From positions 1 through 64,000 of the IMG/VR virus record IMGVR_UViG_3300043219_000566: 64,000 nucleotides of DNA, one strand, 5' to 3'. Within the stretch, counting starts at the first letter, position 1. Each line of letters starts with the position of its first letter. Of the stretch, positions 10,463-44,349 are shown piece after piece. The position numbers and the translations under genes are program-made. The notes beneath the pieces were generated by a model. It searched no databases and was not told the origin of the DNA. It saw nothing but the letters and a program-made list of their open reading frames with translations.

Positions 10463-10474
10463 ACACACACACAA

Positions 10475-10501
10475 GGAGCCTGCGCGAATCGCGCAGGCTC
10501 C
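10475..10501 (-). terminator. 12-bp hairpin after the tasA stop (terminator or processing stem)
   Basis: GGAGCCTGCGCG-AAT-CGCGCAGGCTCC, followed on the minus strand by TTGTGTGTGTG rather than a U-tract. Confidence 0.5.
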
Positions 10502-10519
10502 CTGCATGGGCAGACAAAT

Positions 10520-11644
10520 CTACGCAGCCGCGCTGTCGCCGTGCTGCAGCTTGCGGTCCTGGTACGACGGGAAGACCGGCAGGCCTTCCAGCTTACGCCA
10601 CTGGCAGTAGAGATCCTTCAGGAACATCTTGACCATGTAACGCACCGACATCTGGTACCGACGGGCCGCACTGGTGATGTAGTGCAGCTTCCCGTCCTTA
10701 CCCTCTGCCTGCTTGCCATCGTTGTGCGTCCCGTACTGCTCGTGGTTGTTCATACGGTGCCGGTAATTGTAGTAGACCCGCGCGTACGAATCCTCCGGGC
10801 TGACCAGCACTTGCTTGCGCGGCCGCTTCCGGCGGTTCTTCTCGTCCTCGCGGCCCCAGAGCGTCGCGCCACAGACCGTCCACGTTCCTTCGACCTTGCG
10901 CTCCAGACAGCTCTTGATCCTCCGGACAACCTCGGGGGCCTCCTCGTACGTCCGCTCGTCGCAGTAATCCCACTTGCCCACCTTCAGCAAGTTGGGACCG
11001 AGCACGCCCATGAGCTTCGTCTTCAGCCACGGGTTGTACGTGACGCTGAGCCGCGTCACCTTATTGCCCGCATGGTTGGTGTACTCCCGATCAACCAGAT
11101 GCTCCTTGCGCTTGGAGCGCCCGCGGTGGTCTCCGGCGACATCGAGCCCAGCGTACTTCCACAGGCTAGACGCATACCTGGCCTTGCGGATGTCGAACTC
11201 GCTGATGATCACCGCTGCCGCAACTTCCCCGATCCCGTCGATCGAGTTCAGCCACGGCCAGATGGAGCACTCGCTCAACAGCGCAGGCAGCGATTTGACC
11301 AGCTCCTTCTCGGCCGCAAGCAAGCTGTCGAGTACCCCGAGCAGCGCCTTCTCCGCCCCGGTGGCGATCAGGCCCTCGCCCTCTTCGAGCGGAAGTTCGC
11401 TCGCCGCCGCATCCGAAAGCCGCTTGCAGCTCTCGCGGAGCGCCGCAAGGTACTCCAAGCTCTGCTTGCTCAGCTCCTTCTCGGCCTTGCCGGGTTCTTG
11501 CCCCAGCTTGAACTTGATCTCCCCCACCAGCCGGTTGCTGCACGCGATCCGCAAACGTTGCGCATCGTCGCGACCCCGGACCGCCAGGCGAACTGCTCGC
11601 CGGAAGAGATCGAAAGGGTCAATGTCTCTTACAGATGCTACCAT
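10520..11644 (-). CDS. tasA: TasA-like Nop-domain protein (IS110/Nop5-related, no recognisable RuvC or HNH domain), 374 aa
   Basis: Start MVASVRD at ATG 11644 after AGGAG. Coiled coil RDDAQRLRIACSNRL; Nop/IS110 C-terminal motif IWPWLNSIDGIGEVAAAVIISEFDIRKARYASSLWKYAGL...YNPWLKTKLMGVLG...RYMVKMFLKDLYCQWRKLEG. Flanked on both sides by 36-nt dual-repeat arrays. Confidence 0.8.
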   Translation of the reverse strand: MVASVRDIDPFDLFRRAVRLAVRGRDDAQRLRIACSNRLVGEIKFKLGQEPGKAEKELSKQSLEYLAALRESCKRLSDAAASELPLEEGEGLIATGAEKALLGVLDSLLAAEKELVKSLPALLSECSIWPWLNSIDGIGEVAAAVIISEFDIRKARYASSLWKYAGLDVAGDHRGRSKRKEHLVDREYTNHAGNKVTRLSVTYNPWLKTKLMGVLGPNLLKVGKWDYCDERTYEEAPEVVRRIKSCLERKVEGTWTVCGATLWGREDEKNRRKRPRKQVLVSPEDSYARVYYNYRHRMNNHEQYGTHNDGKQAEGKDGKLHYITSAARRYQMSVRYMVKMFLKDLYCQWRKLEGLPVFPSYQDRKLQHGDSAAA

Positions 11645-11690
11645 GGTACTTCTCCTGTGTGTGTGAATGAAACAATGTCTTCTTTCAAAG

Positions 11691-14300: not shown

Positions 14301-15162
14301 TCGATCGAATCCGGTTGAGCATCTCCGACAAGTCGACTAGCCCAACCGCGCCATCACCGTCGGAATCGTACTCATCGTTCATCTCGCCGTAAACCGACAG
14401 CAACCCCGCAAGATCCGCCAGCGTAGCCGGAGCGCTCTCAATGATGATGATCGAACAACCGCGCCGCCCGGCAAGCAAGTTCCACCCACCATACTGTTCG
14501 TCGTAGATGGCGCTGTGTGAGTACATGTTGAACGAGAGCGGAATCTCGATCGTAGAGTTCGGCGCTATAGCAAGCGCCTCGAAGTGAAGCGTGTCGATCA
14601 ATAGGCCAGCCGGAGTTGCCTCTGGGAACGGACCCATACTGGCCCAGGCCTGGTAATCAGCAGTTCCATCCTCGTTGGTGTTGTTGATGCCGCCCAGCCC
14701 GCTGTCCGGCGGAAACCCCTGGAACATCCATTGACCACCGGACGTAGGATCAGGCGGCCAAGCCCCACCCTCGCCAACCAGCCGCAGCTCAGTCGGGTCC
14801 CACTGCAACAAGCAGTCGAGCAGGCAAAACGGTTCGTTCTGCCCAACCGCGAAGATGTGCACGTCGACGATGTCGCCTACGTGCCTCGTCTCGGCAGTGC
14901 AGCGTAGTTCAAGATCGACCGGAAGGTTGGCATTGGCCGGAACATCGTAGGCGAACACCGCGGTTGCAAAGGGCTCGTCGGTGCCCCACTCGTTGTCGTC
15001 CACCGCGTACAGCTCAACATAGACAGTGTCGCCTATTTCCGCGGCAGGAGTTTCAGTCCGCAGATCCAAATCAATAACCCGCCAGTCTTGAGCTTGCGCG
15101 CAGCAAACCGCCGCAACAGCTAGCACTGATGCAACCAGCGCCATTTTCCAAATCCGGGACAT
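14293..15162 (-). CDS. secreted protein with cohesin-like domain(s) and C-terminal dockerin/EF-hand-like motif
   Basis: Signal peptide ending AAVCCAQA; HVGDIVDVHIFAV...LQWDPTELRLVG; C-terminal LADLAGLLSVYG...YDSDGDGAVGLVDLSEML. Confidence 0.6.
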   Translation of the reverse strand: MSRIWKMALVASVLAVAAVCCAQAQDWRVIDLDLRTETPAAEIGDTVYVELYAVDDNEWGTDEPFATAVFAYDVPANANLPVDLELRCTAETRHVGDIVDVHIFAVGQNEPFCLLDCLLQWDPTELRLVGEGGAWPPDPTSGGQWMFQGFPPDSGLGGINNTNEDGTADYQAWASMGPFPEATPAGLLIDTLHFEALAIAPNSTIEIPLSFNMYSHSAIYDEQYGGWNLLAGRRGCSIIIIESAPATLADLAGLLSVYGEMNDEYDSDGDGAVGLVDLSEMLNRIRSTP

Positions 15163-18081: not shown

Positions 18082-18717
18082 CTACTGATGCCTGATGCCG
18101 AACTGCCGCTCCCGGGGCAACAACGACATAACTTCGATGGCAATATCGTCCAGCTCATCAACGATGTTCCAGCCGCCATATTCGTCATCGTAAGCGCCGG
18201 CGACGGTCCAAAGATCAAACTCATCATGTATGACGAGCGTGGTCGCCCCGACACCCACGGCTTCAAAGATGAACGTCGTCACGTAGGTCCCGGCCGAAGT
18301 TGCTATCGGCAACGGGTTCCAGTAATTCGGCCAGGCATGATAGTCGCAGTCCCCATCCTCAAAAACCACATTCCATCCACCCATTCCGGAATCATCCGGA
18401 AAACCGGTGAACATCCAGTCGTAGTCGATATCGTCGCAGGGCTCAGCGTAGCCGTCTGGCGGCCATTCGGTCTCGCAGACCACGCCAAGTAACCGCAGAA
18501 CCGCCGAATCCCAGCGCAGGGGCGTAGTGACCATTGAGAACGGCTCATCCGTGCCCTCCCCGTTGTCGGCCACCGCGTACAGATCAACATACACGGTGTC
18601 GCCCACCTGCACCGCCGCCGTATCCGTTCGCAGGTCAAGATCGATCACGCGCCACGACTGAGCCTTGGCGGCAGCCAAGCCGCAACCCAAAACCAGAACA
18701 AGTAGTACAGCTCGCAT
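18082..18717 (-). CDS. secreted cohesin-like protein, paralogue of 14293-15162
   Basis: QSWRVIDLDLRTDTAAVQVGDTVYVDLYAV..GTDEPF vs QDWRVIDLDLRTETPAAEIGDTVYVELYAV..GTDEPF; both also share GFPxDSGxGG and YDxxYGGWN. Confidence 0.7.
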   Translation of the reverse strand: MRAVLLVLVLGCGLAAAKAQSWRVIDLDLRTDTAAVQVGDTVYVDLYAVADNGEGTDEPFSMVTTPLRWDSAVLRLLGVVCETEWPPDGYAEPCDDIDYDWMFTGFPDDSGMGGWNVVFEDGDCDYHAWPNYWNPLPIATSAGTYVTTFIFEAVGVGATTLVIHDEFDLWTVAGAYDDEYGGWNIVDELDDIAIEVMSLLPRERQFGIRHQ

Positions 18718-18814
18718 TTGTAGCTCCTTCGAGTTAGGACCAAAAACGCAGATAATCTTCTTGATTATCCTCGCGCGGCCCAATACTACCAGACGCTACT
18801 CCATGCGCAGAAAT

Positions 18815-24123: not shown

Positions 24124-24576
24124 TCAATTATGCGCCTGTATTTCCCGCCAGGCGCGAATGAGCAACGTAGTAGTCGTGGGAATCAGCCGGTCGCAACGCA
24201 CGAAGAACCGATCGCGCAATACTGCGTTAAGCCCCGAAGTCATCACGTAGCCGCAGTGCCCGAATTCCTGCGTGAACCGGCCAGACACCTCGTAGTAGAT
24301 CACGGAATGCTGAACGCGTGGCGTCGGGCCGGTGTACCCGACCTCGACGAAGTAACCGTGCAGGGGCACAGACAGAGAACGGTGCGTGGGCGGACCGATG
24401 ATCTCAACCGGGCCGTACGCGTGCTTGAACACCGCCCGCTCGCCGAGCTGGAACCGAACGGCCGAGGGCACCCCACCTGGGGGCACCAAGAAACCGTCCA
24501 GCCCATTTATATGATTGCTGACGATCAGCTCCGGAGCGCGGTTGCTGTCGCTAACGCATGCTGCCTGACGGGTCAC
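24124..24576 (-). CDS. protein with SH3-barrel-like segment
   Basis: FQLGERAVFKHAYGPVEIIG...YFVEV. Confidence 0.45.
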   Translation of the reverse strand: MTRQAACVSDSNRAPELIVSNHINGLDGFLVPPGGVPSAVRFQLGERAVFKHAYGPVEIIGPPTHRSLSVPLHGYFVEVGYTGPTPRVQHSVIYYEVSGRFTQEFGHCGYVMTSGLNAVLRDRFFVRCDRLIPTTTTLLIRAWREIQAHN

Positions 24577-25101
24577 GAAGTATCCTCAGCAGAATTGTCA
24601 GCATCCCACGCCCCGCCAGACTCAGTAAGCCGAGAGAGTCTCCGCGCGCGAGAGCGCATCGCCTTCGTCGCCGCAACGTTGGGAGAACATCCCTCCGAGA
24701 TCAAGAACGCCGCCTCGGCGATCATGGCCGCCACCGTGGCAACGACGTACCCGCGGAGACACACCCGCGGAACGCCGCCGCTGGCGCTGATATAGCCGAC
24801 GTCGCCGCCGATCTCATCCGGACCGTACGATTCCTCTTTGTTCAAGTGCACCGTCAAAGTGCTCGCGTTGTCCCTAATAAGCCGCATGTCGTGCTCCTTT
24901 TTGAAATGAAAGAGATGTGGACCTGCTCACACAGGGCTTGTTCTTGGCATGAGCGCGATCTCGCCCCAGAACTGCGCCGCCGTGATTCGAGCGGAGTTGG
25001 CAGCCAGCGTAGCAACCAGCTCGCCCATCGTGTCGCGCTGATGTTTCAGCAACCCCAGCGTGTCGCTGTCCATCCGAACCAGCTGGTAAACGGCATCGTC
25101 A

Positions 25102-26082: not shown

Positions 26083-26300
26083 TCGCCGTTTCTGGCCCAG
26101 AAACGCGGGCTTTCATCCGGTACATCGTACCTCGCTACAAGCCTGCAGCGCTAGCCTGCGGGTCTATCGGCGGCTTTTTCTTAGCACTTGGCGATTTTCC
26201 CCGACCGGAAAATAAATCCCGGATTCAGGCCAGAAATGGGGGTGCGCGGATGCCTAGTAACAGGGTTCAGTTACTTCGGGCGGATTCCAGCCAGTCTCCA

Positions 26301-26945
26301 TTACGAGCTTGAGCTGCGAGTCCCCCCGTCCCGCGTACCGAGCCAGCGTTTCTCAGCGCCAGCAAACTGTAGATCAGACATCGCCATGGGGCTCCAACGG
26401 TACGTGGCTGCAATCTCGGCCGCGGCGCTGACGACCAGCCTGATGTACTCAATGCTCTCGCTGTACTTCTTGCTCGTCACTACCAAGGCCCGCAGATGGA
26501 CAGATCTGGCCTGCAAGATGCGCAAAGCAGCCGAAGTCACGAACACGGACTGGCCGCTGTCCAGAGACAGCTCACAGACGCGGTAGAGCGGTTTCCCGGG
26601 GCTGTACGGCTTCACGTAGACGTCTGAGCCCACCGAAGGCAGCAAATCGCCGTCAGCACGCCTTAGCCGCTTCCTACGGCCCTTCAGGCCGGTCGGTCCA
26701 GCCTTCAGGAACCGCTCGGAGAACCAGTCGCCCCTGAGCTTGGCTTCGCCCCAGTGATCCACCGGCCGCACCTGGTGATTGACGTGATACCAGACGTACG
26801 GGGGAGTGAGAATGGCTCTGACCACCATGACAACCCCGATGGTCTCCACGCTGGTGCCGAACGAGTCCTTGCAGGCCCGATGCGGCTTGATCATGACCTC
26901 GTCGCCGGGGAAGAACCGGTGCCGGGGATTGGTGATGTCAGGCAT
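26301..26945 (-). CDS. protein with two SH3-barrel-like segments
   Basis: RFFPGDEVMIK...GVVMVV...WYHV, and PSVGSDVYVKP; GAGGAGG RBS. Confidence 0.55.
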   Translation of the reverse strand: MPDITNPRHRFFPGDEVMIKPHRACKDSFGTSVETIGVVMVVRAILTPPYVWYHVNHQVRPVDHWGEAKLRGDWFSERFLKAGPTGLKGRRKRLRRADGDLLPSVGSDVYVKPYSPGKPLYRVCELSLDSGQSVFVTSAALRILQARSVHLRALVVTSKKYSESIEYIRLVVSAAAEIAATYRWSPMAMSDLQFAGAEKRWLGTRDGGTRSSSS

Positions 26946-27200: not shown

Positions 27201-27503
27201 CTACGGCGCAGACCGGGACAAGTTGTAACGTGCCTGACGGCGACTCTGCGCCGCCGCCTCAAACGCGTCCACGATCTCCTGGCTTACGGTCTTCTGCATC
27301 TCGTCCTCGCGGAACCAGAAACGAAGGCTGCCGTCCACTTGCACGCAGTAACGCCTGCCGCGATCTCTGGTCAAACAGCTGAACACGTAGCCGAAGCACT
27401 CCACGATCGTAGGAGCAGCATTCCAGTCGCCCGAGAGACAACCACGCCGACAGCAACGAACGCGATCACCTATCTTGAACTTGCGCTGCTCGCCGAGCAT
27501 CAT
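27201..27503 (-). CDS. SH3-chain paralogue (last in the chain)
   Basis: KFKIGDRVRC...RYCVQVDG...FREDEMQKTVSQEIVDAF. Confidence 0.7.
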   Translation of the reverse strand: MMLGEQRKFKIGDRVRCCRRGCLSGDWNAAPTIVECFGYVFSCLTRDRGRRYCVQVDGSLRFWFREDEMQKTVSQEIVDAFEAAAQSRRQARYNLSRSAP

Positions 27504-27786
27504 CGTCTCCTTTCGGACAACCAGCGTTGAACCAGTCGCACAGCACCTTGGAGGCGCTGTAGGAGCGCAAGCGCGACTTGTGCATAGGCACCCAGCACCG
27601 CCTGACGAACGCGCTGCTGCAATTCACGATAGAGACCAGAGCTTTCTTCTGATCGAGCCACTCGATCTTGCAGGTCAGCCACACGTCGGAAGTCTGGTTG
27701 GAGCGGCACTGTACAATGTCGCCAGTGCGCATCAGCAACTCCCGCTCATCCGACCGCGGCAACGTCAGCTGCTGTATCGGCATCAT
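27466..27786 (-). CDS. divergent SH3-chain member
   Basis: MRTGDIVQC...CKIEW; GAGGAGG RBS. Confidence 0.55.
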   Translation of the reverse strand: MMPIQQLTLPRSDERELLMRTGDIVQCRSNQTSDVWLTCKIEWLDQKKALVSIVNCSSAFVRRCWVPMHKSRLRSYSASKVLCDWFNAGCPKGDDDARRAAQVQDR

Positions 27787-27788
27787 CG

Positions 27789-28214
27789 TCACCTCCTCGC
27801 AAGCAGCGGCGCACCACGCTTGCATCGCTTCTCCTTCCAGAACCGTACCAGCAACGTGGACGTAGTGGGTTTCAACGCATTGGGCCACACGAACTTCCGC
27901 GGCTGGGTAGCAGCTTCAGGGTGCATCGCCACGATTTTGGTGGAGAAGTACTCCATCTGCGGAACAACGTCGTCAGAAATCCCGGACACCTCGTAGTAAG
28001 CCGACGTCTGTCCGTGCAGCTTGAACGGGCCATCAATGATCGTCACCAGCACGTTCGCCGGAAGGAACAACGCGCGCTCGCCGCGAGTGAACCGATCTTT
28101 CTTCGGCAACGTCTGCAGATCGAGCCGCTCGTTTCTCGCAGGCCCGGTCTCGGACTCGATCAGAACTGGTTGCAGAAATATGATCGGCATGCGTCTGGTT
28201 TGCCCTCCAGGCAT
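27789..28214 (-). CDS. divergent SH3-chain member
   Basis: RFTRGERALF...VTIIDG...YYEV; starts at the junction motif ATG. Confidence 0.55.
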   Translation of the reverse strand: MPGGQTRRMPIIFLQPVLIESETGPARNERLDLQTLPKKDRFTRGERALFLPANVLVTIIDGPFKLHGQTSAYYEVSGISDDVVPQMEYFSTKIVAMHPEAATQPRKFVWPNALKPTTSTLLVRFWKEKRCKRGAPLLARR

Positions 28215-28425
28215 CAGCTATCTCCTGTGTAGTAGTTTTCTCCATTTCGTTCTCGGTGAACCACACTCGTTGAGAGCCGCCGTCTATCTGCACGACATAC
28301 CGGTGGTCGGTGAGGGTGCGAGTCGAGATATCAACCACGTGGCCGTAGTAGCGCTCGGGCAAGCATAGGCACGGGTAGCACAAAACGCGATCACCCACCT
28401 TGAACTTGGGCTGCACGCCAAGCAT
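28033..28425 (-). CDS. SH3-chain paralogue
   Basis: PKFKVGDRVLC...RYVVQIDG...FTENEMEKTTTQEIADAW. Confidence 0.7.
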   Translation of the reverse strand: MLGVQPKFKVGDRVLCYPCLCLPERYYGHVVDISTRTLTDHRYVVQIDGGSQRVWFTENEMEKTTTQEIADAWRANQTHADHISATSSDRVRDRACEKRAARSADVAEERSVHSRRARVVPSGERAGDDH

Positions 28426-28663
28426 CGACGACCTCCTGTCCAGCGGTCTTCTGCAACTCTTCTTCTCCGAACCTGTAACGACCGCCGCCGTCCAGCTGCA
28501 CGAAGTAGCGAGAAGCACCCCAGTTCCGGCGTAAGCTGACTACGTAACCGTAGCGATGCGGAACAGCAGCAAAAGCAAGGTTCCCGTGCTCCCGGCTCAT
28601 GAGAAAATACGTGCAGCACATAACCCGGTCACCCACCTTGAACTTGGGCAGCTCTCCAGGCAT
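28391..28663 (-). CDS. SH3-chain paralogue
   Basis: MPGELPKFKVGDRVMC...RYFVQLDG...EELQKTAGQEVVDAW. Confidence 0.75.
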   Translation of the reverse strand: MPGELPKFKVGDRVMCCTYFLMSREHGNLAFAAVPHRYGYVVSLRRNWGASRYFVQLDGGGRYRFGEEELQKTAGQEVVDAWRAAQVQGG

Positions 28664-28874
28664 CGGCGATCTCCTGTCCAACGGTTTTTTGCAGCTCGCG
28701 CTCGACAAACGCGCAGCAACCCCGGCCGTCTATCTGCACGTGGTAGATGAGCCTACCAGCGTATTCACAAATCCAGCTCACGTAACCGGTGCCCCAGGCG
28801 CGAATAGACAACCTGCGATGTGAGTCGCAAAAAACGCGGTCACCGATCTCGAACTTGGTCTGCATGCCAGGCAT
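28629..28874 (-). CDS. SH3-chain paralogue
   Basis: KFEIGDRVFC...YHVQIDG...ERELQKTVGQEIADAW. Confidence 0.75.
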   Translation of the reverse strand: MPGMQTKFEIGDRVFCDSHRRLSIRAWGTGYVSWICEYAGRLIYHVQIDGRGCCAFVERELQKTVGQEIADAWRAAQVQGG

Positions 28875-29094
28875 CGACGACCTCCTGCCCTACGGTTTTT
28901 TCCAACTCGCCCTCAAAGAACGGGCGGTGAGTAGCATTGCTCAAGTCCACGTAGTAAATACATGGGTTGTTCTCGTGCACTGAAACCATACGCACGCAAC
29001 CGCAGCCCCATGGCCGCGAAATCCGACCTGTCCGATCGCGCTCGTCGCAACGAACGCGATCACCTTTCTTGAACTTGGGCGGCTCTCCAGGCAT
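28840..29094 (-). CDS. SH3-chain paralogue
   Basis: MPGEPPKFKKGDRVRC...YYVDLS...EGELEKTVGQEVVDAW. Confidence 0.75.
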   Translation of the reverse strand: MPGEPPKFKKGDRVRCDERDRTGRISRPWGCGCVRMVSVHENNPCIYYVDLSNATHRPFFEGELEKTVGQEVVDAWHADQVRDR

Positions 29095-29299
29095 CGACGA
29101 TCTCCTGACTCGTGGTGAGCTGTAACTCGTACTCGTACACCCGGTATAACTCGCCGCCATCTGCACAAACTACGTAATCCTGGGGAAACGTGCATTCGCA
29201 CACGCGTCCGAAGCTCACACTCGTAGGACGTAGGTTTGGAAAAGCGGTATCGACGATAAAACGAACGCGATCACCCACCCTGAATCGCTTTCCAGGCAT
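29060..29299 (-). CDS. SH3-chain paralogue
   Basis: RFRVGDRVRF...YVVCADG...EYELQLTTSQEIVDAW. Confidence 0.75.
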   Translation of the reverse strand: MPGKRFRVGDRVRFIVDTAFPNLRPTSVSFGRVCECTFPQDYVVCADGGELYRVYEYELQLTTSQEIVDAWRAAQVQER

Positions 29300-29537
29300 C
29301 ACTAATCTCCTGAGACACTGCGATCTCTACGTGCTCCTTCTTGATTAGTATCGGATGACGCGTGCCGTTGAGCCGCACCTCGCAAATCGAGTTCATAAAC
29401 TCGGCAGATTGCCCAGAAAACGCGCGCCCGTCGCCGATCTCGGTAACCAGCCCGAACGCGGGCGCACCGAGCTGTCGGTAGCACAGGACCCGGTCACCGA
29501 TCTTGAGCGTCGGGAACTTGAGTATCTCGCCAGGCAT
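29271..29537 (-). CDS. SH3-chain paralogue
   Basis: TLKIGDRVLC...FGLVTEI...EVRLNG...IAVSQEISDAW. Confidence 0.75.
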   Translation of the reverse strand: MPGEILKFPTLKIGDRVLCYRQLGAPAFGLVTEIGDGRAFSGQSAEFMNSICEVRLNGTRHPILIKKEHVEIAVSQEISDAWKAIQGG

Positions 29538-29820
29538 CGACAATCTCCTGCGTCGCTGTCTTCTCCATCAGCTCCTCCGGGATCATGGCACCTGTGCCGC
29601 CGTTGCGGTAACGCACCATGTAGAAACCGCGCAACTCAGCAGACTTCGCTGGTGGGCTGCGCTCGCCCCGCGGATCGAGCGTAACGGCTGAGAAGCTGAT
29701 TACTATTTCGTTCTTAACCGTAGCAAAACCAGCACGATGAATCCCCCTGGTCGATTTCACCAAGACCTGATCACCGGGCTTAAAAGCGTGCTCGCCGGGC
29801 TTGAAGGTCGGGGAAAGCAT
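29494..29820 (-). CDS. SH3-chain paralogue
   Basis: FKPGDQVLVK...YMVRYRNG...EELMEKTATQEIVDAW. Confidence 0.75.
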   Translation of the reverse strand: MLSPTFKPGEHAFKPGDQVLVKSTRGIHRAGFATVKNEIVISFSAVTLDPRGERSPPAKSAELRGFYMVRYRNGGTGAMIPEELMEKTATQEIVDAWRDTQVPDAQDR

Positions 29821-30016
29821 CGATGATCTCCTGTGCCGCCGTTTTGCGCGCCCAGCACTTGCCATGCGTGCTGGGCCTCGAACAGCGGTCGAACTTGATG
29901 TCGATACAGCCGGGTACCATCGCCAACAGCACTCGGCCAAGCATCCAACGCGGCCGCGCGACGGAACCTACGTTCAAAGCAACGCGGTCACCGGGCTTGA
30001 AGATCGGAGAAGGCAT
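29780..30016 (-). CDS. SH3-chain paralogue
   Basis: FKPGDRVAL...LGRV...DIKFD...KTAAQEIIDAF. Confidence 0.7.
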   Translation of the reverse strand: MPSPIFKPGDRVALNVGSVARPRWMLGRVLLAMVPGCIDIKFDRCSRPSTHGKCWARKTAAQEIIDAFPDLQARRARF

Positions 30017-30269
30017 CGATGATCTCCTGTGTCGCTGTCTTGCACACCCGCGCCGGATGAACCGCGGTGGAGCTGCTGTAACCGTTAAATACAACGTCAA
30101 CAAGCTCTGGGTGCGCTTTGAGTTCCTGAACCTGGAAATCGAAAGGAGGAGTCGGCGGAGGCAGACAAGTCGCCGGGGCGCACACTCTCCCGAAAAACAG
30201 CCACGGGGTGTTGCCGGAGCCCAGGTTCACCTGCACACAGTCACCGATTTTTAAGGTCGGGGAAGGCAT
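29988..30269 (-). CDS. SH3-chain paralogue
   Basis: TLKIGDCVQV...FGRV...DVVFNG...KTATQEIIDAF. Confidence 0.7.
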   Translation of the reverse strand: MPSPTLKIGDCVQVNLGSGNTPWLFFGRVCAPATCLPPPTPPFDFQVQELKAHPELVDVVFNGYSSSTAVHPARVCKTATQEIIDAFSDLQAR

Positions 30270-30462
30270 CGATGATCTCCTGAGTCGCCGTTAGTTGTAC
30301 ATCGTGCTTGAAATGGAGACCGTGCCAGTTCTCCCCGTCGAACCGCACCAGCGCGCCCCACCCGTGTTCAAGCCCGGCTACATAGCCAAGCCGCCGTCTG
30401 TCCGGACGACGCGAAACGTAAACGATAACGCGGTCACCGATTTTTAAGGTCGAGGAAGGCAT
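30241..30462 (-). CDS. SH3-chain paralogue
   Basis: TLKIGDRVIV...LGYV...VRFDG...LTATQEIIDAF. Confidence 0.75.
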   Translation of the reverse strand: MPSSTLKIGDRVIVYVSRRPDRRRLGYVAGLEHGWGALVRFDGENWHGLHFKHDVQLTATQEIIDAFPDLKNR

Positions 30463-30664
30463 CGATGATCTCCTGCGTAGCTGTCAGAAAAACGTACTCG
30501 GCATGGACGAGAATCTCCTTTCCGTCGTTCAATCGCACGCGGACACTGTAGCAGCCACCGCGGATAATGCGCCCAAGGCCGCGCTGGCTGCCGTCCCAGC
30601 GCACACATACGACGTGATCACCCTCCTCGAACACCTTGAACGCTCTGTTCGTTCTTAAAAGCAT
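30434..30664 (-). CDS. SH3-chain paralogue
   Basis: FEEGDHVVC...LGRII...VRLNDG...LTATQEIIDAF. Confidence 0.75.
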   Translation of the reverse strand: MLLRTNRAFKVFEEGDHVVCVRWDGSQRGLGRIIRGGCYSVRVRLNDGKEILVHAEYVFLTATQEIIDAFLDLKNR

Positions 30665-30887
30665 TGATGATCTCCTGCGACGTCGTGCGCCACATCCAGT
30701 CCGCGAACACCCGGGGCGTTGCCACCGTCTTGCCCTTGATCACGCGCACGTCGTACATCGGCACGCGCTGGTTGTTCATGGAGGGGTCGCGAACTGTCCC
30801 GGCATACTTGATAACAGTGCCGATAAGCGCGTCGCCGAACAGCTGGATGAGCACGCGCTCACCGGGCTTGAACTTATCGAAGACCAT
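30618..30887 (-). CDS. SH3-chain paralogue
   Basis: KFKPGERVLI...IGTVI...YDVRV...RTTSQEIINAF. Confidence 0.75.
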   Translation of the reverse strand: MVFDKFKPGERVLIQLFGDALIGTVIKYAGTVRDPSMNNQRVPMYDVRVIKGKTVATPRVFADWMWRTTSQEIINAFKNEQSVQGVRGG

Positions 30888-31255
30888 CAGCTCAATCCGA
30901 ACTTGAGCAAGAGCTGCTCGGTGGCGGGCAGCTCCAGCTCGGCGCGGTAGGCAAAGACGAATTTACTGGCGTGCAACGACCGCAGTTTGAATAATCGGAG
31001 ACCGTGCTTGTCGTAGTCGTATTTAACCACCCGAGCAAAACCCTCTTCCCACCAATCTACAGAGTACCAGCAGCAGTAATAGACTCGTTGCCCGACATGT
31101 GGACACCACGGTTTCTGCGCCAGGTCGATTGGGGCGGTTGGCTCCGGCAACTGCACGGGCTTGGGTTCACGCTGATCAGACTCGGCAAGAGCCTGGAAAT
31201 CGATCGGGGAAGTTGGCGCGGGCGGGCAGACGGGTTTCGGCTTTTTCCCGAACAT
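30887..31255 (-). CDS. Pro-rich N-terminus plus SH3-barrel-like domain
   Basis: PHVGQRVYYC...FARVV...AELELPATEQLL. Confidence 0.55.
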   Translation of the reverse strand: MFGKKPKPVCPPAPTSPIDFQALAESDQREPKPVQLPEPTAPIDLAQKPWCPHVGQRVYYCCWYSVDWWEEGFARVVKYDYDKHGLRLFKLRSLHASKFVFAYRAELELPATEQLLLKFGLS

Positions 31256-31265
31256 GACGTAGCCC

Positions 31266-31541
31266 TCAGCTAGCAGCTGCATGCCGCTCGGCAGCCCAGG
31301 TCCGCACTAGCTCGTGGCTCGCCGAACGTACGATGCCCAGCTCCAAAACGTTACAAGTTGCTCCGGTATTCAACGAGCGCACCTGGTAGACGTTCCCGGA
31401 AACACCGTGTTTGCGCATGAGAATGCGCCAACGCTGGCTGATGTTGCCGCGGTAGTGCAAACAGACTTCCTCGCCGTGATCAAACCGAAAAGGACTGATC
31501 CGGCGGTGAGTTCGCTTCTTGGTAGCTAATCGTTCACTCAT
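31266..31541 (-). CDS. divergent SH3-chain member
   Basis: RFDHGEEVCL...VYQVRSL...RSASHELVRTW. Confidence 0.55.
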   Translation of the reverse strand: MSERLATKKRTHRRISPFRFDHGEEVCLHYRGNISQRWRILMRKHGVSGNVYQVRSLNTGATCNVLELGIVRSASHELVRTWAAERHAAAS

Positions 31542-31876
31542 GGTTCACCGTCCAATCTCGGAGAATGCAGCATGCGGGCGTGCGAGGCGAGCGTCTCGGC
31601 CCCGTCCAAACAAACCTCGTTGGCCGGAAGCGAGAGGGTACCTCGGTCCACAGGCGACGCCGCATCCAAGATTCTCAGCCAATACCACACCTGCCTGCCG
31701 CTCTGTCCCACTGAGTCTACGCGGGCACGGCAGCCTTCGAGCCGCCGATACTTGTGGGACCGGCTCGCGGTGGAAAGTGGCTTGCGGATGACGACAATGT
31801 CACCAGGCTGCAACACTTCCGTGGCCGGAGGGTCCTCACGGTCTTCGATCCAGTCCTGTAGCGACTTGGTTGTCAT
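31538..31876 (-). CDS. divergent SH3-chain member
   Basis: LQPGDIVVI...GCRARV...YWLRI; ATGA overlap with the upstream gene. Confidence 0.55.
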   Translation of the reverse strand: MTTKSLQDWIEDREDPPATEVLQPGDIVVIRKPLSTASRSHKYRRLEGCRARVDSVGQSGRQVWYWLRILDAASPVDRGTLSLPANEVCLDGAETLASHARMLHSPRLDGEP

Positions 31877-32145
31877 AGGTTTAGATGTCTTCTGTGGCCA
31901 GCGGCAACCTCTGCGCTGACCGCAATAGCCAGGTCCTGGTGACGTAACGACCACACCTTTCTGTGTTTGGGATGCACGTTCTCAAAAGTGACCCGCACGA
32001 TCCAGTAACCGGCTGCGCCATCCCCCTCGTACGAACACGACTGCACCAAGGCGCGCTTGCCGTGCATCGGGTGCGCTCTACTTACGGGCGTAACCCACTC
32101 GCCCTCAGTAAAGGGCGGTGGGTTACGGGTAGTTCGACCGCTCAT
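31873..32145 (-). CDS. divergent SH3-chain member (first in the chain)
   Basis: PFTEGEWVT...GKRALV...WIVRVTF...AIAVSAEVAA. Confidence 0.55.
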   Translation of the reverse strand: MSGRTTRNPPPFTEGEWVTPVSRAHPMHGKRALVQSCSYEGDGAAGYWIVRVTFENVHPKHRKVWSLRHQDLAIAVSAEVAAGHRRHLNL

Positions 32146-33040: not shown

Positions 33041-33087
33041 GACTATCACCAAAAAAGAGAGCGAGCATCCCTGCTCGCCCGGTTGCG

Positions 33088-40569: not shown

Positions 40570-40768
40570 CGGTGTCTTCCGAACTATCCAGATTCGGACG
40601 CTCAGCCTCGTTGGCTGCGTCTCTGATCTTCTGCTCCGCGTCGCGGGCAGCCTGTTCCTCGCGCCTGCGGCGATCTGCCGTAGCCGCTTGTTGATCTTTC
40701 TTCTGAGAGCGCCAGATGCCAAGTGCTTCCAGCACTGCTCGAAGTATGAAACTAAGCCACTTCATCAC
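40526..40768 (-). CDS. i-spanin (Rz)-like protein
   Basis: N-terminal hydrophobic helix followed by the charged coiled coil RRRREEQAARDAEQKIRDAANEAE. Confidence 0.45.
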   Translation of the reverse strand: MMKWLSFILRAVLEALGIWRSQKKDQQAATADRRRREEQAARDAEQKIRDAANEAERPNLDSSEDTDDPMGVEHWNRKRR

Positions 40769-43700
40769 GCCGTCCTCGGCAAGTACGGTTCCGGCACGCC
40801 CATCTTCTCTAACTTGGCACGCAGCTCGGCTGCGGCCTCGGGCTCCTTCTTCGGATCAGGCTTCTCGTCCCAGCGCAGGAACAGCTCCTTGTCGACGTCG
40901 ATGGCGTAGCCACCGTTAGCAAACTTGCTGTCGTCAACGAGATCGTAGAGCCCGTTACACACGCCCTTCGGCGGCAGTGGGATACGAGCCAGATTGCTCA
41001 TGCACCAATCGATGAGGCAGTTCGTCCGCATCATCAAATCGATAGAGCCCACGGCTACCTCGAAGATCAAAGCGTCATGCACACCCAGAGCAATACGGAA
41101 GTCGAGCGAGTAATTGCGCTGCACGCGATACTGCTCGCGCGCATCACGGCAATTATACACCGCCTTGTTCAAACATTCCGCTACCGTGCTCTGAATCGGA
41201 AAATTGCAAGCCTCTCGCTCCTGCTGTGACATCACGGACGAGTCGTCTACCGTGTGGAACCGCCGATAACGCCAGCACGGGTTGATCAAATAGCCCGGAG
41301 AATGAACTGCCTGGCGACACAGATCCAAGAACCGCGACACCTCGACAAACTCGCTGTGGAAACTGTTGATCATCGCCTGGCAATCGTCGGTCGTAACCTC
41401 GACGCCCTCCTGCTTTAGCTCGCGGGCAATCGCCCCGGCCGAACGGCCGTAAGGGATGCCGAAATTGACGGTTTTGGCCGCCACGCGCTTGTCCTTACCG
41501 ATGCTCTCGACGTAGCCCTTGGGCGGGCCGTGCATAACGGCGCAGTACGGCAGCTTGAAACCGCTGATCGCGCGCTCGGCGTGCAGGTCTCGCTTCCAGG
41601 GAATCATCTTCACGGTGGTGTCCACCGCAGTAGAGAACACGTGCCATTGCCCAGCACGATCCTTGTACTCCCCGTAACGCGTACCGGACGGGATCTCGTC
41701 GCCCTCCCTGACGGCGATATCACGCACCCAATCCGGGTGCAGCCAGCGGTACGGCTCGCCTAGCGCGTCAACCAGCACCGGGTAAGGCGGACGCTCTGTC
41801 AGCACGTTCCAGAATTGCAGGTCCCCGGACAGCAGAGCCAACACGATCAGCTCAGCTTGGCAGTAGTCGGCTTCGACCAGCACATAGCCGGGCTGCGCCA
41901 TAAAAATAGAACGGATCTTGGGCGGAGCCTGCTCCCACTTGGCGAACATAGCGTGCAGCTCAGGCTCGCGGCGTTTGGGCAAGTTCTGAAGATTGGGCTT
42001 TCGGGAAGCCCAGCGACCGGTCTCCAGTATCTGCAGAATATGAGTGCGCACCCGCCCGTCAGGGTCGACGTGCTGCATCAATCCGCCCTCGGTAATCTCG
42101 TGTGTATCCGGGTCGATTACCGGCAAGCTAGTGAAGTTCTTGCAGACCTGATCCACGAAACGCAGTTTACGCAGCTGGTTGGCCACCGGGTCCTCGGGAG
42201 ACAAAATCCCCAAGGTTTCCTTGTCGGTGCTGGGCGCACACTCCAGCTGACGTCTATCGCGCAGCACCCGATCCCAGTCGATCGGTGGCTTATCGGTGCT
42301 TTTGATCGGAGTCAACCCGCAGCAGTAGGCCCCCGCGGGCCGAAGGCGGATCGGCACGAGCGGCGTATCCCGCTTCTTGCCATTGAACGCCTCGCCGAAC
42401 AGTAGCTCGCGCACGTGCTGGATCGAGCGAAAATTGAAAGCTGGCCATTCGATCTGCTTGCGCAAGTAATCGAGCAACTCCGTTTTCTTGCGATCGTAAG
42501 TAATCGCCAGCTCGGTGATCCGATCCCGGTCTGCCAGCAGACCGGTTTCCTCGATCTCCAAAATGCCCACGCACGAACGCATCTCTTCGGACAGTAGCTC
42601 AGCCAGCTTCGCGCGATCCTCGTGGCACATATTGTCCTGCTCAGCGTACCGCTCATCGAGCCGCTCGTCGCAGCGCCAGGTCACGTCGGCATCGAACAGG
42701 GCGTAGAGATACAACACGTGCTCCGGGATCAATCCGAAGCCCTTGGCAGCTGGCACCGCGAGTTCGTCGAGCCATCCCTGCAGCTCGGTTTCGTACCGAT
42801 CCACGTCGGTGTACTTGAGCATCAGCGAGGACAGATCCTGCTTGGCACTCTCGTACAACAGGTGGTGCTTCAGCATGGTGTCGAAGCCGTCGGCGTACTT
42901 GTCGATAAAGTCGATGCCCAGCGATTTCACCCACGGATAATCAGCCCGCAAATTGTGTCCGCCGATCCGCGTGCCAGGATGCAGCAGTAGCCGCGCCAGC
43001 TCTTTGCTGACTTCCGCCATCTCCGCGTCGGTGAAATTGGGCACCAGAGCGTTGAGCACCTCGACGCCCATCTCCGGGACTTTGTTGCCAGCCGCATCAG
43101 TCCACACGTAACCCAAGGCAGGCTGTCCGTCGTCGTCTACGTACTCCATGTCGTACGCCAGCGCCTGCGAAACAGTGGGCTTGGGGAAGCTAATGAGATT
43201 GGGATGCCCGTTCACGGAAGCGTAATGCCGCGGAAAAGGTACCCGCGCGTGGCGGTGGAAAGGAATCAACACCGCGTGCCCGGATTTGTACGACAACTGC
43301 AACGTCAACAGCTTGCCGTCGGCCCACGGGCTACGACCAGACCACTCGCAGTCCAACGCGAGCTTGTTCTCGCTCTCCTGCAACCGCTGGTCTACGTACT
43401 CACGTACCTGATGAACCGAGCGCAGTACACAAGCATTGTTGACCTGCCCGTCCACGTCCTGATACTCCCGCGGAATCTGTTTGCGTATCGTGCCGCAGGC
43501 AAAACTCGACGCTCGCGCCAGATCGTTGGACAGCCCGTCCCGCATATTCGGCTCACGAGCTACCGCAGCCGGGTGCATGGTCGGAAAGGTGTTGATGACG
43601 ATCTCTTCGGGCACCTGCCCGGCGATATCGCACTCTTCGGGCTCCTGCCCACTGCTGTCGCATTGACGCGGCAAATGCGTCGTCCAGAGTCTTACCGACC

Positions 43701-44349
43701 CGCGGCTCTTGGTCACCGATGAGCCCCTGCCGTGAAAATGCTTGATAGCCTCGGTGCCCAGCAGAATCACTAGCTTCGGCCGGATGATAACCAGTTCTGC
43801 CCACAGCAACCAGGCACATTCCTTGACCCAGGCCTGCTTGAACTTACCACCCGGCGGAGGCTGGAAACGGCAAATGTTGGTAAAGTAGGCATCGTCGAGA
43901 AAGTCAGCGATACCCTGCTCGATCAAGCAACGCTGCAGCTCGCGTCCGCTCTCGCCGACGAACAGATAATCTGTGTCGTACTCGGTGCGGCCAGGATGTT
44001 TGCCGACGACCACGACCTTAGCGCAGCCGGGCCGCGGGCCACGAGGAAAGGCTTGCGCGGCCGTGCCCCGATTCGCATCGCGGGCAATCGGCTTGAACCC
44101 CGTGTGCCCAGGAATGAACTTCGCCGTATAAGGCAACCCGACGCCGATCGCGTCGGGGATCGGGCGGTTGTACACGTCACATAGCAAGTTCCAGAGAAAC
44201 GCCATGAAGTCGAAACGGTTCCGAAACGAATCTTCGAGAATGCTAGCCAACGCCGGACCCAGCGGAGGACCGTACGGGCGCTGCTCCTCGACGTTGCGCA
44301 ACGCCTCGACCCACGGCGGCAACCTCGGGTCGATAATCACTTGGCACAC
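40765..44349 (-). CDS. polA: family A DNA polymerase with N-terminal uracil-DNA-glycosylase-like domain and 3'-5' exonuclease
   Basis: UDG-like VGKHPG...FVGESG...YFTNIC...MHPAAV; Exo I LDCEW, Exo II HNLRAD, Exo III YALFDA; Pol motif A EADYCQAE, motif B RVAAKTVNFGIPYG, motif C VHDAL. Confidence 0.93.
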   Translation of the reverse strand: MCQVIIDPRLPPWVEALRNVEEQRPYGPPLGPALASILEDSFRNRFDFMAFLWNLLCDVYNRPIPDAIGVGLPYTAKFIPGHTGFKPIARDANRGTAAQAFPRGPRPGCAKVVVVGKHPGRTEYDTDYLFVGESGRELQRCLIEQGIADFLDDAYFTNICRFQPPPGGKFKQAWVKECAWLLWAELVIIRPKLVILLGTEAIKHFHGRGSSVTKSRGSVRLWTTHLPRQCDSSGQEPEECDIAGQVPEEIVINTFPTMHPAAVAREPNMRDGLSNDLARASSFACGTIRKQIPREYQDVDGQVNNACVLRSVHQVREYVDQRLQESENKLALDCEWSGRSPWADGKLLTLQLSYKSGHAVLIPFHRHARVPFPRHYASVNGHPNLISFPKPTVSQALAYDMEYVDDDGQPALGYVWTDAAGNKVPEMGVEVLNALVPNFTDAEMAEVSKELARLLLHPGTRIGGHNLRADYPWVKSLGIDFIDKYADGFDTMLKHHLLYESAKQDLSSLMLKYTDVDRYETELQGWLDELAVPAAKGFGLIPEHVLYLYALFDADVTWRCDERLDERYAEQDNMCHEDRAKLAELLSEEMRSCVGILEIEETGLLADRDRITELAITYDRKKTELLDYLRKQIEWPAFNFRSIQHVRELLFGEAFNGKKRDTPLVPIRLRPAGAYCCGLTPIKSTDKPPIDWDRVLRDRRQLECAPSTDKETLGILSPEDPVANQLRKLRFVDQVCKNFTSLPVIDPDTHEITEGGLMQHVDPDGRVRTHILQILETGRWASRKPNLQNLPKRREPELHAMFAKWEQAPPKIRSIFMAQPGYVLVEADYCQAELIVLALLSGDLQFWNVLTERPPYPVLVDALGEPYRWLHPDWVRDIAVREGDEIPSGTRYGEYKDRAGQWHVFSTAVDTTVKMIPWKRDLHAERAISGFKLPYCAVMHGPPKGYVESIGKDKRVAAKTVNFGIPYGRSAGAIARELKQEGVEVTTDDCQAMINSFHSEFVEVSRFLDLCRQAVHSPGYLINPCWRYRRFHTVDDSSVMSQQEREACNFPIQSTVAECLNKAVYNCRDAREQYRVQRNYSLDFRIALGVHDALIFEVAVGSIDLMMRTNCLIDWCMSNLARIPLPPKGVCNGLYDLVDDSKFANGGYAIDVDKELFLRWDEKPDPKKEPEAAAELRAKLEKMGVPEPYLPRTA

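What the first reader, a model, noticed from the sequence alone, without database searches (positions are those of the whole stretch)
27201..32145. Chain of about 16 SH3-barrel-like mini-genes linked by a triple-purpose junction sequence
Seen: tandem genes of about 70-140 aa share an N-terminal (F/L)KxGDRV, a variable core and, in the core members, a C-terminal (K/L)TxxQE(I/V)xDA(W/F). At 12 junctions CAG GAG ATC GTC GAT GCC encodes QEIVDA and also supplies AGGAG-N7-ATG for the next gene in the +1 frame. In most cases the upstream stop is the TGA inside the next gene's GGTGA(T/C) Gly-Asp codons. The result is a conserved overlap of about 30-45 nt alternating with hypervariable cores, a repeat-spacer layout at the protein level. 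Inference: a translationally coupled, recombination-prone cassette library, for example of diverse binders of host or anti-phage proteins. I do not recognise this as a described system.
Basis: partly seen in the sequence, partly recalled or inferred. Interest (0 to 1): 0.85.

Follow-up and report, generated by a model that had tools for sequence, protein, structure and literature searches.

The report
Tandem overlapping beta-barrel genes in phage
A 216-kb uncultured phage carries an unbroken chain of about 19 tiny genes, 13 of them clear copies of one unannotated Tudor/SH3-like barrel protein, in which the end of each gene also carries the ribosome-binding site and start codon of the next; the layout is unusual and recurs in a few deep-sea sediment contigs, but what the proteins do is unknown.

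Summary
From 32145 to 27201 there are 19 small genes with no intergenic gap over 2 nt. Thirteen form one family (HMM E 1e-21 to 1e-33). Twelve junctions share CAGGAG-N7-ATG, none expected by chance, always with a +1 frame shift. Overlaps are 29-47 nt at eleven junctions and 182 nt at the twelfth. Codon choice shows the signals are selected in their own right. The Asp codon holding the ATG is GAT or AAT in all 12 genes followed by another gene, and GAC in the terminal one. The Gly codon that supplies the upstream stop is GGT in 13 of 13, against 21% usage elsewhere. A confident AlphaFold model gives a five-stranded small barrel plus a C-terminal helix, resembling Tudor, PWWP, SH3 and KOW domains. 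No Pfam, PHROG or NCBIfam family matches. The same junction logic occurs in at least four other metagenome arrays. Synonymous sites in the cores are saturated, and one related fragment keeps the gene order, so this is an old, stable paralogue operon rather than a fast-shuffling cassette library. Translational coupling is inferred, and function is unknown. It is a new variant of known kinds.

The parts
33059..33080 (-). Terminator-like hairpin with a T-run upstream of the operon, a likely transcript boundary
   Evidence: This is a consensus match only.
31873..32145 (-). g1, 90 aa, a peripheral small gene at the start of the gap-free chain
   Evidence: It has no significant match to the core HMM.
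31538..31876 (-). g2, 112 aa, peripheral; ATGA overlap with g1; contains PGDIVV
   Evidence: hhalign E 0.038, motif only.
31266..31541 (-). g3, 91 aa, peripheral; ATGA overlap with g2; its C-terminus resembles the core helix
   Evidence: (hhalign E 0.003).
30887..31282 (-). g4, 122-131 aa, peripheral and Pro-rich; its stop overlaps the g5 start by 1 nt (TGATG)
   Evidence: repeat D13, shared with g8.
30618..30887 (-). g5, 89 aa, the first core member
30434..30664 (-). g6, 76 aa, core; junction ATG at 30664; 47-nt overlap
30241..30462 (-). g7, 73 aa, core; 29-nt overlap; its orthologue in L002 is 50% identical
29988..30269 (-). g8, 93 aa, core, with a Pro-rich loop insertion; its orthologue in L002 is 42% identical
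29780..30016 (-). g9, 78 aa, core; stops at a TAA; 41-nt overlap with g10
29494..29820 (-). g10, 108 aa, core; duplicated head motif and long loops
29271..29537 (-). g11, 88 aa, core
29060..29299 (-). g12, 79 aa, core; this is the member that was modelled
   Evidence: pLDDT 87.5; five strands plus helix 63-78.
28840..29094 (-). g13, 84 aa, core
28629..28874 (-). g14, 81 aa, core
28391..28663 (-). g15, 90 aa, core
28033..28425 (-). g16, 130 aa, core; it has a long tail because g17 lacks the GGTGA stop
27789..28214 (-). g17, 133-141 aa; starts at a standard junction ATG but has a different body; its paralogue lies at 24127-24585
27466..27786 (-). g18, 105-106 aa, non-core; ends in the GGTGA of g19 after a junction-type 35-nt overlap
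   Evidence: single-sequence model, pLDDT 52, inconclusive.
27201..27500 (-). g19, 99 aa, the last core member; it keeps the QEIVDA peptide but uses GAC GCG, so it has no embedded ATG
26301..26945 (-). g20, 214 aa, lying after a 255-nt gap; weak barrel-like N-terminal match
   Evidence: E 0.02.
26217..26235 (-). Terminator-like site after g20
   Evidence: This is a consensus match only.

Best explanation
This is an old, tandemly duplicated operon in a 216-kb jumbo phage. It encodes many separate small proteins that share one scaffold: a five-stranded Tudor/SH3-like barrel followed by a C-terminal helix. The helix begins with T-x-x-Q-E-I-(I/V)-D-A. The codons for Q-E spell the Shine-Dalgarno sequence AGGAG, and seven bases later the codons for D-A spell the ATG of the next gene in the +1 frame. 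In this phage the upstream gene then usually ends at the TGA inside the next gene's Gly-Asp codons. Each ATG-to-ATG unit is therefore self-contained, carrying a start codon, the scaffold, and the translation signals for whatever gene follows. Unequal crossing-over between junctions can add, remove or swap units without breaking expression. That is how the array most likely grew, by slow birth and death of units. Ribosomes probably initiate at each internal SD or re-initiate after terminating about 30 nt downstream, so the whole chain can be expressed from one transcript (inferred). The paralogues differ mainly in two loops of variable length on the face where related domains bind ligands, and in net charge. 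I therefore read them as a repertoire of binding modules with different partners, used during infection (inferred, low confidence).
For: Gene chain and junctions. Family membership.

Selection on the translation signals themselves: Q and E are always CAG GAG. The Asp/Asn codon is xAT in 12 of 12 members followed by a gene, against 38% GAT usage elsewhere, and it is GAC in terminal g19. The Gly codon of the G-D motif is GGT in 13 of 13, against 21% usage. Other conserved residues have third-position identity of only 0.2-0.6. In array L124 the residue after the embedded ATG varies among A, V, D and G, which are all G-initial codons, so the ATG is more conserved than the amino acid. Other genes of the phage use AGGAG/GGAGG 7-10 nt before their ATG.

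Fold: AF2 pLDDT 87.5, with Foldseek matches to PWWP, Tudor, integrase SH3, KOW and SPbeta YorP and to many uncharacterised small phage proteins. The family profile also hits multi-Tudor and multi-SH3 repeat proteins.

Recurrence: the same junction logic occurs in L003, L004/5/6, L124 and L002, at GC contents of 48% and 58% and with overlap lengths of 14-20 nt.

Tandem duplication: adjacent cores are more similar than in random orders (p = 0.0008).

Loop-length variation: the beta1-to-beta2 segment spans 11-24 residues and the beta2-to-beta3 segment 11-31, against 17-20 for the remainder. Isoelectric points range from 5.3 to 11.1.
Against: There are no expression data, so coupling, stoichiometry and even translation of each member are inferred. 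No conserved RNA hairpin occludes the SD, so structure-mediated coupling is not indicated. Overlaps of 29-47 nt are long for termination-reinitiation. No function, ligand or characterised homologue is known. Foldseek E-values are weak (5e-3 or worse against PDB). The peripheral genes (g1-g4, g17, g18, g20) could not be shown to share the fold.
Confidence: 0.6

Rival explanations
1. Active cassette library. The junctions are recombination hot spots, and the array is reshuffled, expanded and contracted on short time scales to vary a binder repertoire.
For: Junctions share 20-40 nt of near-identity. Similar paralogues sit next to each other. g17 and g18 look like foreign or strongly diverged bodies sitting between intact junction remnants. 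The phage encodes a UvsX-like recombinase and SbcCD.
Against: No repeat pair exceeds about 76% identity over 138 nt, and most identity is confined to about 20 nt. Synonymous sites are saturated. L002 keeps the g7-g8 order at 42-50% identity. L004, L005 and L006 are 99.9% identical with identical gene order, and L126 equals L127, although these may be re-assemblies of the same samples.
Confidence: 0.15
2. The chain encodes subunits of one hetero-oligomeric assembly, such as a ring or filament of small barrels comparable to Sm/LSm paralogues. The tight coupling would then serve fixed stoichiometry.
For: Tightly coupled operons often encode complex subunits (established knowledge). Natural in-frame fusions of neighbouring members occur in two independent arrays (L003 junction at 819 and L124 junction at 2018).
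Against: Only neighbours can be fused by a single indel, so the fusions are not specific evidence. Member numbers and loop sizes differ between arrays. No oligomer prediction could be run.
Confidence: 0.1
3. Programmed +1 frameshifting at the xGG-TGA stop reads into the next gene's frame and makes beads-on-a-string multi-barrel proteins.
For: The next gene is always in the +1 frame. The stop is TGA followed by C or T. A +1 slip at the stop would land exactly on the Gly-Asp codons. Fixed fusions of this kind exist in L003 and L124. Multi-barrel repeat proteins exist in nature.
Against: The P-site codon is CGG or AGG at most junctions, and these re-pair poorly after a +1 slip. The SD lies 29 nt or more upstream of the stop, not the roughly 3 nt seen in prfB. 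Every downstream gene keeps its own SD and ATG under selection.
Confidence: 0.07
4. This is a decayed multi-domain repeat protein broken by frameshifts, that is, pseudogene debris.
For: The profile resembles long multi-Tudor and multi-SH3 proteins.
Against: All 12 junctions have the same +1 offset, with SD and ATG preserved. Codon choice shows selection for the ATG and the TGA. The design is conserved in at least four divergent arrays. No core ORF carries an internal stop.
Confidence: 0.03

Closest known systems
Translationally coupled overlapping genes in phage and bacterial operons (ATGA/TGATG overlaps, termination-reinitiation)
   Same: The genes are on the same strand with no gaps. The SD of each gene lies inside the preceding ORF. 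g1-g5 use the classic 1-4 nt overlaps.
   Different: In the core the SD and the ATG are built into a conserved peptide motif of a repeated protein family. Overlaps are 29-47 nt, always in the +1 frame, and the same junction is repeated 12 times.
Tudor, PWWP, SH3 and KOW small beta-barrel domains, including multi-Tudor and Mind-bomb SH3 repeat proteins
   Same: The predicted fold matches. The family profile hits proteins with up to 24 such repeats (Pfam Tudor_5, SH3_15).
   Different: No member reaches any Pfam threshold. There is no conserved aromatic cage. The units are separate genes, not repeats in one chain. The C-terminal QEIxDA helix is specific to this family.
Small uncharacterised phage barrels such as SPbeta YorP (PDB 2HEQ) and DUF4314 proteins
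   Same: They have similar size and fold and are phage-encoded.
   Different: Those are single-copy genes with no known junction architecture, and there is no significant sequence similarity. Their function is equally unknown.
Tandem arrays of divergent paralogous immunity genes (polyimmunity loci) and orphan cassettes of polymorphic toxin systems (PMC3113570, PMC3482391, PMC2935791)
   Same: They are arrays of many divergent small paralogues. In Rhs/CdiA orphan cassettes, conserved junction motifs flank variable parts and permit recombination.
   Different: There is no toxin gene or toxin-associated domain nearby, the protein families are unrelated, and here every unit is a complete, separately initiated gene. 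This is an analogy only.
Integron gene-cassette arrays
   Same: Both are series of short, promoterless ORFs separated by a recurring junction.
   Different: There is no attC-like inverted repeat. No integrase was detected among the ORFs scanned. The junction is coding in two frames, and the cassettes are homologous to each other.

Membership tests
Small beta-barrel (SH3/Tudor/PWWP/KOW-like) fold | Five-stranded, highly bent antiparallel barrel of about 60 residues | tested here: met
   The AF2 model of g12, built with a 31-sequence alignment, has pLDDT 87.5 and strands at 11-16, 27-37, 41-46, 51-55 and 59-61. This is a prediction, not a solved structure.
Small beta-barrel (SH3/Tudor/PWWP/KOW-like) fold | Structural similarity to solved members | tested here: met
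   Foldseek TM-scores normalised to the query are 0.55-0.63 against PHF1, PHF20 and Pcl Tudor domains, PWWP 6kco, the foamy-virus integrase C-terminal domain, and KOW. E-values are only 5e-3 to 9e-2.
Pfam Tudor / SH3 / KOW families | Sequence match above the family's gathering score | tested here: not met
   Nine of the 13 core members were scanned, and none gave a Pfam hit at E up to 10. Only the family profile links to proteins carrying Tudor_5 or SH3_15.
Methyl-lysine/arginine-reading 'royal family' Tudor domains | Conserved aromatic cage of three to four aromatic residues | tested here: not met
   The invariant and near-invariant columns are G, D, V, G, V, V, T, Q, E, D and A. No set of conserved aromatic residues occurs in the barrel.
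Translationally coupled operon | Co-directional genes with start/stop overlap and an SD inside the upstream ORF | tested here: met
   with codon evidence.
Translationally coupled operon | Downstream translation depends on upstream translation | not testable with these tools
   This needs reporter assays or ribosome profiling.
Integron cassette array | attC recombination sites (imperfect inverted repeats) between cassettes | tested here: not met
   The consensus fold of the 12 junctions is -0.86 kcal/mol with no covariation. No inverted repeats occur at the junctions.
Integron cassette array | Adjacent tyrosine-recombinase integrase | tested here: inconclusive
   No integrase appeared among the roughly 30 larger ORFs scanned, but not every ORF of the window was scanned.
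Diversity-generating retroelement | Template/variable repeat pair of high identity with adenine-specific differences, plus a reverse transcriptase | tested here: not met
   No repeat pair above about 76% identity longer than the junction. No reverse transcriptase among the ORFs scanned.
prfB-type programmed +1 frameshift site | Slippery P-site codon, an A-site stop, and an SD-like element about 3 nt upstream | tested here: not met
   Stops read CGG/AGG/GGG-TGA-(C/T), and the SD lies at least 29 nt upstream of the stop. Only GGG (4 junctions) could re-pair after a slip.

The most novel reading that the evidence does not exclude
The junction is a self-propagating expression-and-recombination module that lets phages build and remodel a repertoire of small barrel binders. 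Each binder would be tuned to a different host or defence protein, making the array a phage-encoded, germline-style binder library whose units can be duplicated, swapped or fused without ever losing expression.
Probability: 0.15. Interest if true: 0.8.

Novelty: new variant of a known kind. Interest (0 to 1): 0.55.

Why it matters
This is a clean natural example of one short sequence under three simultaneous constraints: a peptide motif, a ribosome-binding site with start codon, and dual-frame coding. The last gene of the array, which needs no downstream start, serves as an internal control. It shows how a protein family can carry its own translation signals, so that each tandem duplicate is expressed at once. 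It also defines an unannotated family of small phage proteins, about 3% of the window (27.2-32.1 kb) and found so far in only a few environmental phages. The scaffold-plus-variable-loop design makes it a candidate set of host-directed binders. Gene callers handle the array poorly: two pipelines disagree on several start sites.

Tried and rejected
1. Pfam, PHROGs and NCBIfam scans of members gave nothing significant.

2. BLAST against 50,697 phage records found no DNA match for the array. The polymerase has only distant relatives, under 25% identity.

3. The search for related loci with the family alignment or with the polymerase in IMG/VR returned only the source contig.

4. A single-junction DNA pattern is too unspecific and gave 115 or more chance loci.

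5. Two-junction patterns gave the following:
   - IMG/VR: only this contig was a true hit. Eight other loci were chance matches with no HMM match.
   - Metagenome scan: two true arrays (L123, which is the same contig as L004, and L124). L122 is a chance match in a repeat protein. L125 is an unrelated tandem repeat next to a capsid-like gene.
   - Genome scan of 185,579 species: three chance hits and no relatives, so there is no prophage or host clue.

6. Profile comparison of g2, g3, g17 and g18 with the family gave only motif-level hints.

7. The single-sequence AF2 model of g18 has low confidence, pLDDT 52.

8. No conserved RNA structure was found at the junctions.

9. The word-indexed protein search with the alignment recovered only 7 proteins, all from loci already in hand.

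10. Literature searches found no description of such an array. Sample identifiers for the source metagenome were not found in any paper.

11. CRISPR-like, DGR and integron readings were considered and rejected; see the membership tests.

Full report
**Source and setting**

The window is the first 64 kb of IMG/VR contig IMGVR_UViG_3300043219_000566, which is 216,501 bp long. Window coordinates equal contig coordinates. A second assembly of the same sequence, Logan SRR11832402 (216,295 bp), starts at a different point and is identical over 20 kb. This suggests a complete, circularly permuted jumbo-phage genome.

The window encodes a replication and recombination module on the minus strand:
- an SbcC/SbcD-like pair;
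- a superfamily-2 helicase;
- a DnaB-like helicase;
- a primase;
- a family-A polymerase fused to a UDG-superfamily domain;
- a UvsX-like recombinase.

There are no tRNAs. GC content is uniform at 58-63%, including the array. No cultured phage is close: there is no DNA match, and the polymerase is under 25% identical to its best hits.

**The observation**

The genes lie on the minus strand. I fixed start codons by reading every candidate start together with its upstream 20 nt. From 32145 to 27201 there are 19 consecutive small genes, g1 to g19, with no intergenic gap larger than 2 nt.

Thirteen of them (g5-g16 and g19) form one family (alignment A1). An HMM built from them recovers exactly these 13 from the six-frame translation of the whole window, at E 1e-21 to 2e-33. 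The next-best hit has E 0.011.

Twelve junctions, the starts of g6 to g17, read CAGGAG, then seven bases, then ATG. The downstream gene is always shifted by +1. The overlap is 29-47 nt, except for 182 nt at g16/g17. A stricter 17-base version of the junction occurs nine times, all inside the array on the minus strand, against zero expected in 100 shuffles. The repeat finder independently reports 13 copies spaced 193-283 nt apart.

The upstream stop is the TGA inside the next gene's GGTGA(T/C) at ten of the twelve junctions and also at g18/g19. Its count of about 16 corresponds to 13 demonstrable members plus peripheral small genes.

**Are the embedded signals functional or incidental?**

I back-translated A1 into a codon alignment. 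At conserved residues away from the junction (the Gly and Val of strand 2, the Val of strand 3, the Thr before the helix), third-position identity is 0.21-0.59. That is close to saturation, so the paralogues are old. Codon choice at the junction sites is very different:

| Site | Codon use in the array | Usage in 16 other genes of the phage |
|---|---|---|
| Gln and Glu of QE (spell AGGAG) | CAG GAG in 13/13 | CAG 83% of Gln codons; GAG 77% of Glu codons |
| Asp/Asn holding the ATG | GAT or AAT in all 12 members followed by another gene | GAT 38% of Asp codons |
| Gly of the G-D motif (supplies the TGA) | GGT in 13/13 | GGT 21% of Gly codons |

The terminal member g19 is a built-in control. 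It keeps the peptide Q-E-I-V-D-A but writes Asp-Ala as GAC GCG, so it has no ATG. This shows two things. The peptide motif is conserved for the protein's own sake, and the ATG is selected only where a gene follows.

Array L124 gives the complementary result. There the residue after the embedded ATG varies among Ala, Val, Asp and Gly. These are all amino acids with G-initial codons, so the ATG is more conserved than the amino acid.

Other genes of this phage use AGGAG or GGAGG 7-10 nt before their ATG, so the embedded motif matches the phage's ordinary ribosome-binding sites.

The geometry of the +1 overlap also explains the nucleotide conservation. The wobble position of the head frame is the first codon position of the tail frame, so no site is free to vary. 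No appeal to gene conversion is needed.

**Fold**

I built a 31-sequence alignment (A2) from the 13 window members and 18 members from other loci. With it, AlphaFold2 gives a confident model of g12 (mean pLDDT 87.5). It has five strands, at 11-16, 27-37, 41-46, 51-55 and 59-61, followed by a helix at 63-78. The helix is the T-x-x-Q-E-I-V-D-A-W segment. The region that overlaps the next gene therefore encodes a helix in one frame and the unstructured N-terminal head in the other.

Foldseek against the PDB returns the following:
- a Drosophila PWWP domain (6kco);
- SPbeta prophage YorP (2heq);
- the Tudor domains of PHF1, PHF19, PHF20 and Pcl;
- the SH3-like C-terminal domain of foamy-virus integrase;
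- KOW domains.

TM-scores are 0.5-0.63, but E-values are only 5e-3 or worse. Against predicted viral structures, the matches are dozens of uncharacterised small phage proteins, including a DUF4314 protein.

An exhaustive HMMER search of 1.84 billion representative proteins with A1 gave 825 hits at E up to 0.001. The top of the list is dominated by long proteins with up to 24 matched repeats. These carry the Pfam Tudor_5, SH3_15, Agenet or 53BP1-Tudor domains and are largely eukaryotic. They match only the barrel, not the helix.

No individual member reaches any Pfam, PHROG or NCBIfam threshold. No aromatic cage is conserved. Fold-level membership in the small beta-barrel class is therefore supported. 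Membership in any named sequence family is not.

**Variation among members**

Once the head and tail are removed, most pairs of cores have no detectable similarity, with BLAST bit scores of 0-15. Only the block g13-g16 plus g19 reaches 23-33 bits.

Length variation is concentrated in two segments:
- strand 1 to strand 2: 11-24 residues;
- strand 2 to strand 3: 11-31 residues;
- strand 3 to the helix: fixed at 17-20 residues.

In SH3, Tudor and chromo domains these two loops form the ligand-binding face (established knowledge). Isoelectric points range from 5.3 to 11.1, which argues against one common nucleic-acid ligand. The description "conserved ends, hypervariable cores" is fair. However, the scaffold residues inside the cores are conserved, so the analogy with a repeat-spacer array is loose.

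**History of the array**

Adjacent cores are more similar than in random orders (permutation p = 0.0008). Two junction subtypes are clustered: heads reading M-P-S-x-T-L-K-I-G-D in g7-g10, and heads reading M-P-G-E-x-P-K-F-K-V-G-D in g11-g16 and g19. This indicates growth by local tandem duplication.

g17 begins at a standard junction ATG and shares its first ten bases with its neighbours, then diverges. It has a paralogue at 24127-24585 (33% identity, E 9e-8). g18 ends with a junction-type 35-nt overlap into g19. These two genes are either strongly diverged members or bodies exchanged at junctions. Profile comparison shows only motif-level similarity, and a single-sequence model of g18 is too uncertain to decide (pLDDT 52).

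Several observations count against ongoing shuffling:
- No repeat pair exceeds about 76% identity over 138 nt.
- Synonymous sites are saturated.
- The 531-bp fragment L002, from a related phage, carries genes whose best matches are g7 (50% identity) and g8 (42%), in that order. A third gene follows with a g9-like head.

The three copies of the L004 array are 99.9% identical and co-linear. They may come from the same or linked samples, so this says little.

**Recurrence elsewhere**

Small homologues with the C-terminal motif led to several further contigs:
- L002 (531 bp, GC 58%);
- L003 (1.8 kb, GC 58%, six genes);
- L004/L005/L006 (4.9 kb, GC 48%, about 12 family genes plus further overlapping small genes);
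- L124 (2.9 kb, GC 48%, about 11 genes), found through the two-junction DNA pattern.

L003, L004 and L124 come from deep-sea sediment metagenome assemblies KR126 and K940 (accessions SDBU and SDBV; PMC6401483).

In all of these arrays Q-E-(I/L)-I-(D/N)-A is written as CAGGAG-N7-ATG, and the next gene starts in the +1 frame. The upstream stop falls elsewhere, however, giving overlaps of 14-20 nt. The conserved invention is therefore the SD and ATG inside the helix motif. The TGA-in-GGTGA detail is specific to the window's lineage.

The two-junction pattern found no other true array in 2.9 million IMG/VR contigs. It found none in one genome for each of 185,579 prokaryotic species. The design is rare, and no host could be inferred.

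In two arrays a one-base indel inside the overlap has fused two neighbours into a two-barrel ORF, at the L003 junction at 819 and the L124 junction at 2018. This shows that separate and fused forms interconvert easily.

**Mechanism**

The following points are shown:
- a gap-free, co-directional chain of genes;
- an SD and an ATG under selection at each junction;
- a shared barrel-plus-helix scaffold;
- an origin by tandem duplication;
- evolutionary persistence of the design.

The following points are inferred:
- The chain is one transcript. Terminator-like sites lie at 33080-33059 and 26235-26217, and nothing convincing lies between them.
- Ribosomes initiate at each internal SD, or re-initiate after terminating about 30 nt downstream.
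- Unequal crossing-over between junctions adds or removes expressed units.

No conserved hairpin masks the SD, so coupling by unmasking of RNA structure is not indicated.

The function is unknown. I commit, at low confidence, to a repertoire of binding modules with different partners during infection. This rests on the variable loops on the canonical binding face, the heterogeneous charge, and the phage's investment of about 5 kb in the family. The rival readings are an active cassette library, a hetero-oligomeric complex, programmed +1 frameshifting, and a decayed repeat protein. They are weighed in the Rival explanations section.

**Verdict**

The triple-purpose junction is supported by codon-level evidence with an internal control. 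The fold assignment is supported at the class level. The recombination-library and binder ideas remain hypotheses, and the available comparative data point to slow turnover.

I rate this as a new variant of known kinds, namely a tandem paralogue array combined with a translationally coupled overlapping operon, built on an unannotated protein family. It is moderately interesting in its own right, and more so if the members prove to target host defence or takeover factors.

Noticed in passing
window 9050-14290 (-), with 10520-11803 (-): A second multi-copy family of about ten diverged ORFs (35-53% identity, E down to 2e-27) with no Pfam match. An IS110-family transposase-like ORF (Transposase_20) sits between copies.
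   Followed up: partly
window 24127-24585 (-) and 27789-28214 (-): g17 has a paralogue 3 kb downstream (33% identity over 114 aa, E 9e-8). Both end in a P-T-T-x-T-L-L-x-R-x-W motif, which looks like a degenerate form of the core family's helix motif.
   Followed up: partly
window 30128-30167 and 31189-31228 (-): The loop insertion of g8 and the Pro-rich region of g4 share a short motif, P-P-x-P-T-x-P-x-D-F-Q (75% DNA identity). It may be a short linear interaction motif.
   Followed up: no
window 40765-44349 (-): A family-A DNA polymerase of 1194 aa carries an N-terminal uracil-DNA-glycosylase-superfamily domain and a 3'-5' exonuclease domain.
   Followed up: no
window 14293-15162 (-) and 18082-18783 (-): Two larger ORFs are paralogues (38% identity over 213 aa, E 3e-36) with no Pfam match.
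   Followed up: no
L126 and L127 (contig 19060-39299): The JGI and Logan gene calls for identical DNA disagree on the start sites of several array genes (for example g6, g14, g15). The overlapping junction starts confuse automatic gene callers.
   Followed up: partly
L004 2725-3728 (+): At the end of the deep-sea array, three adjacent 111-113 aa paralogues carry a Cys-rich insertion with two C-x-x-C pairs, which looks like a zinc ribbon. They lack the QEIIDA junction and end in S-Y-P-x-S-Y-A-L-A-x-W.
   Followed up: no
L125 4700-6700 (-): A chance hit of the DNA pattern: a 207-nt tandem repeat next to a capsid-like gene on a 19.9-kb contig. It is unrelated to the family.
   Followed up: partly
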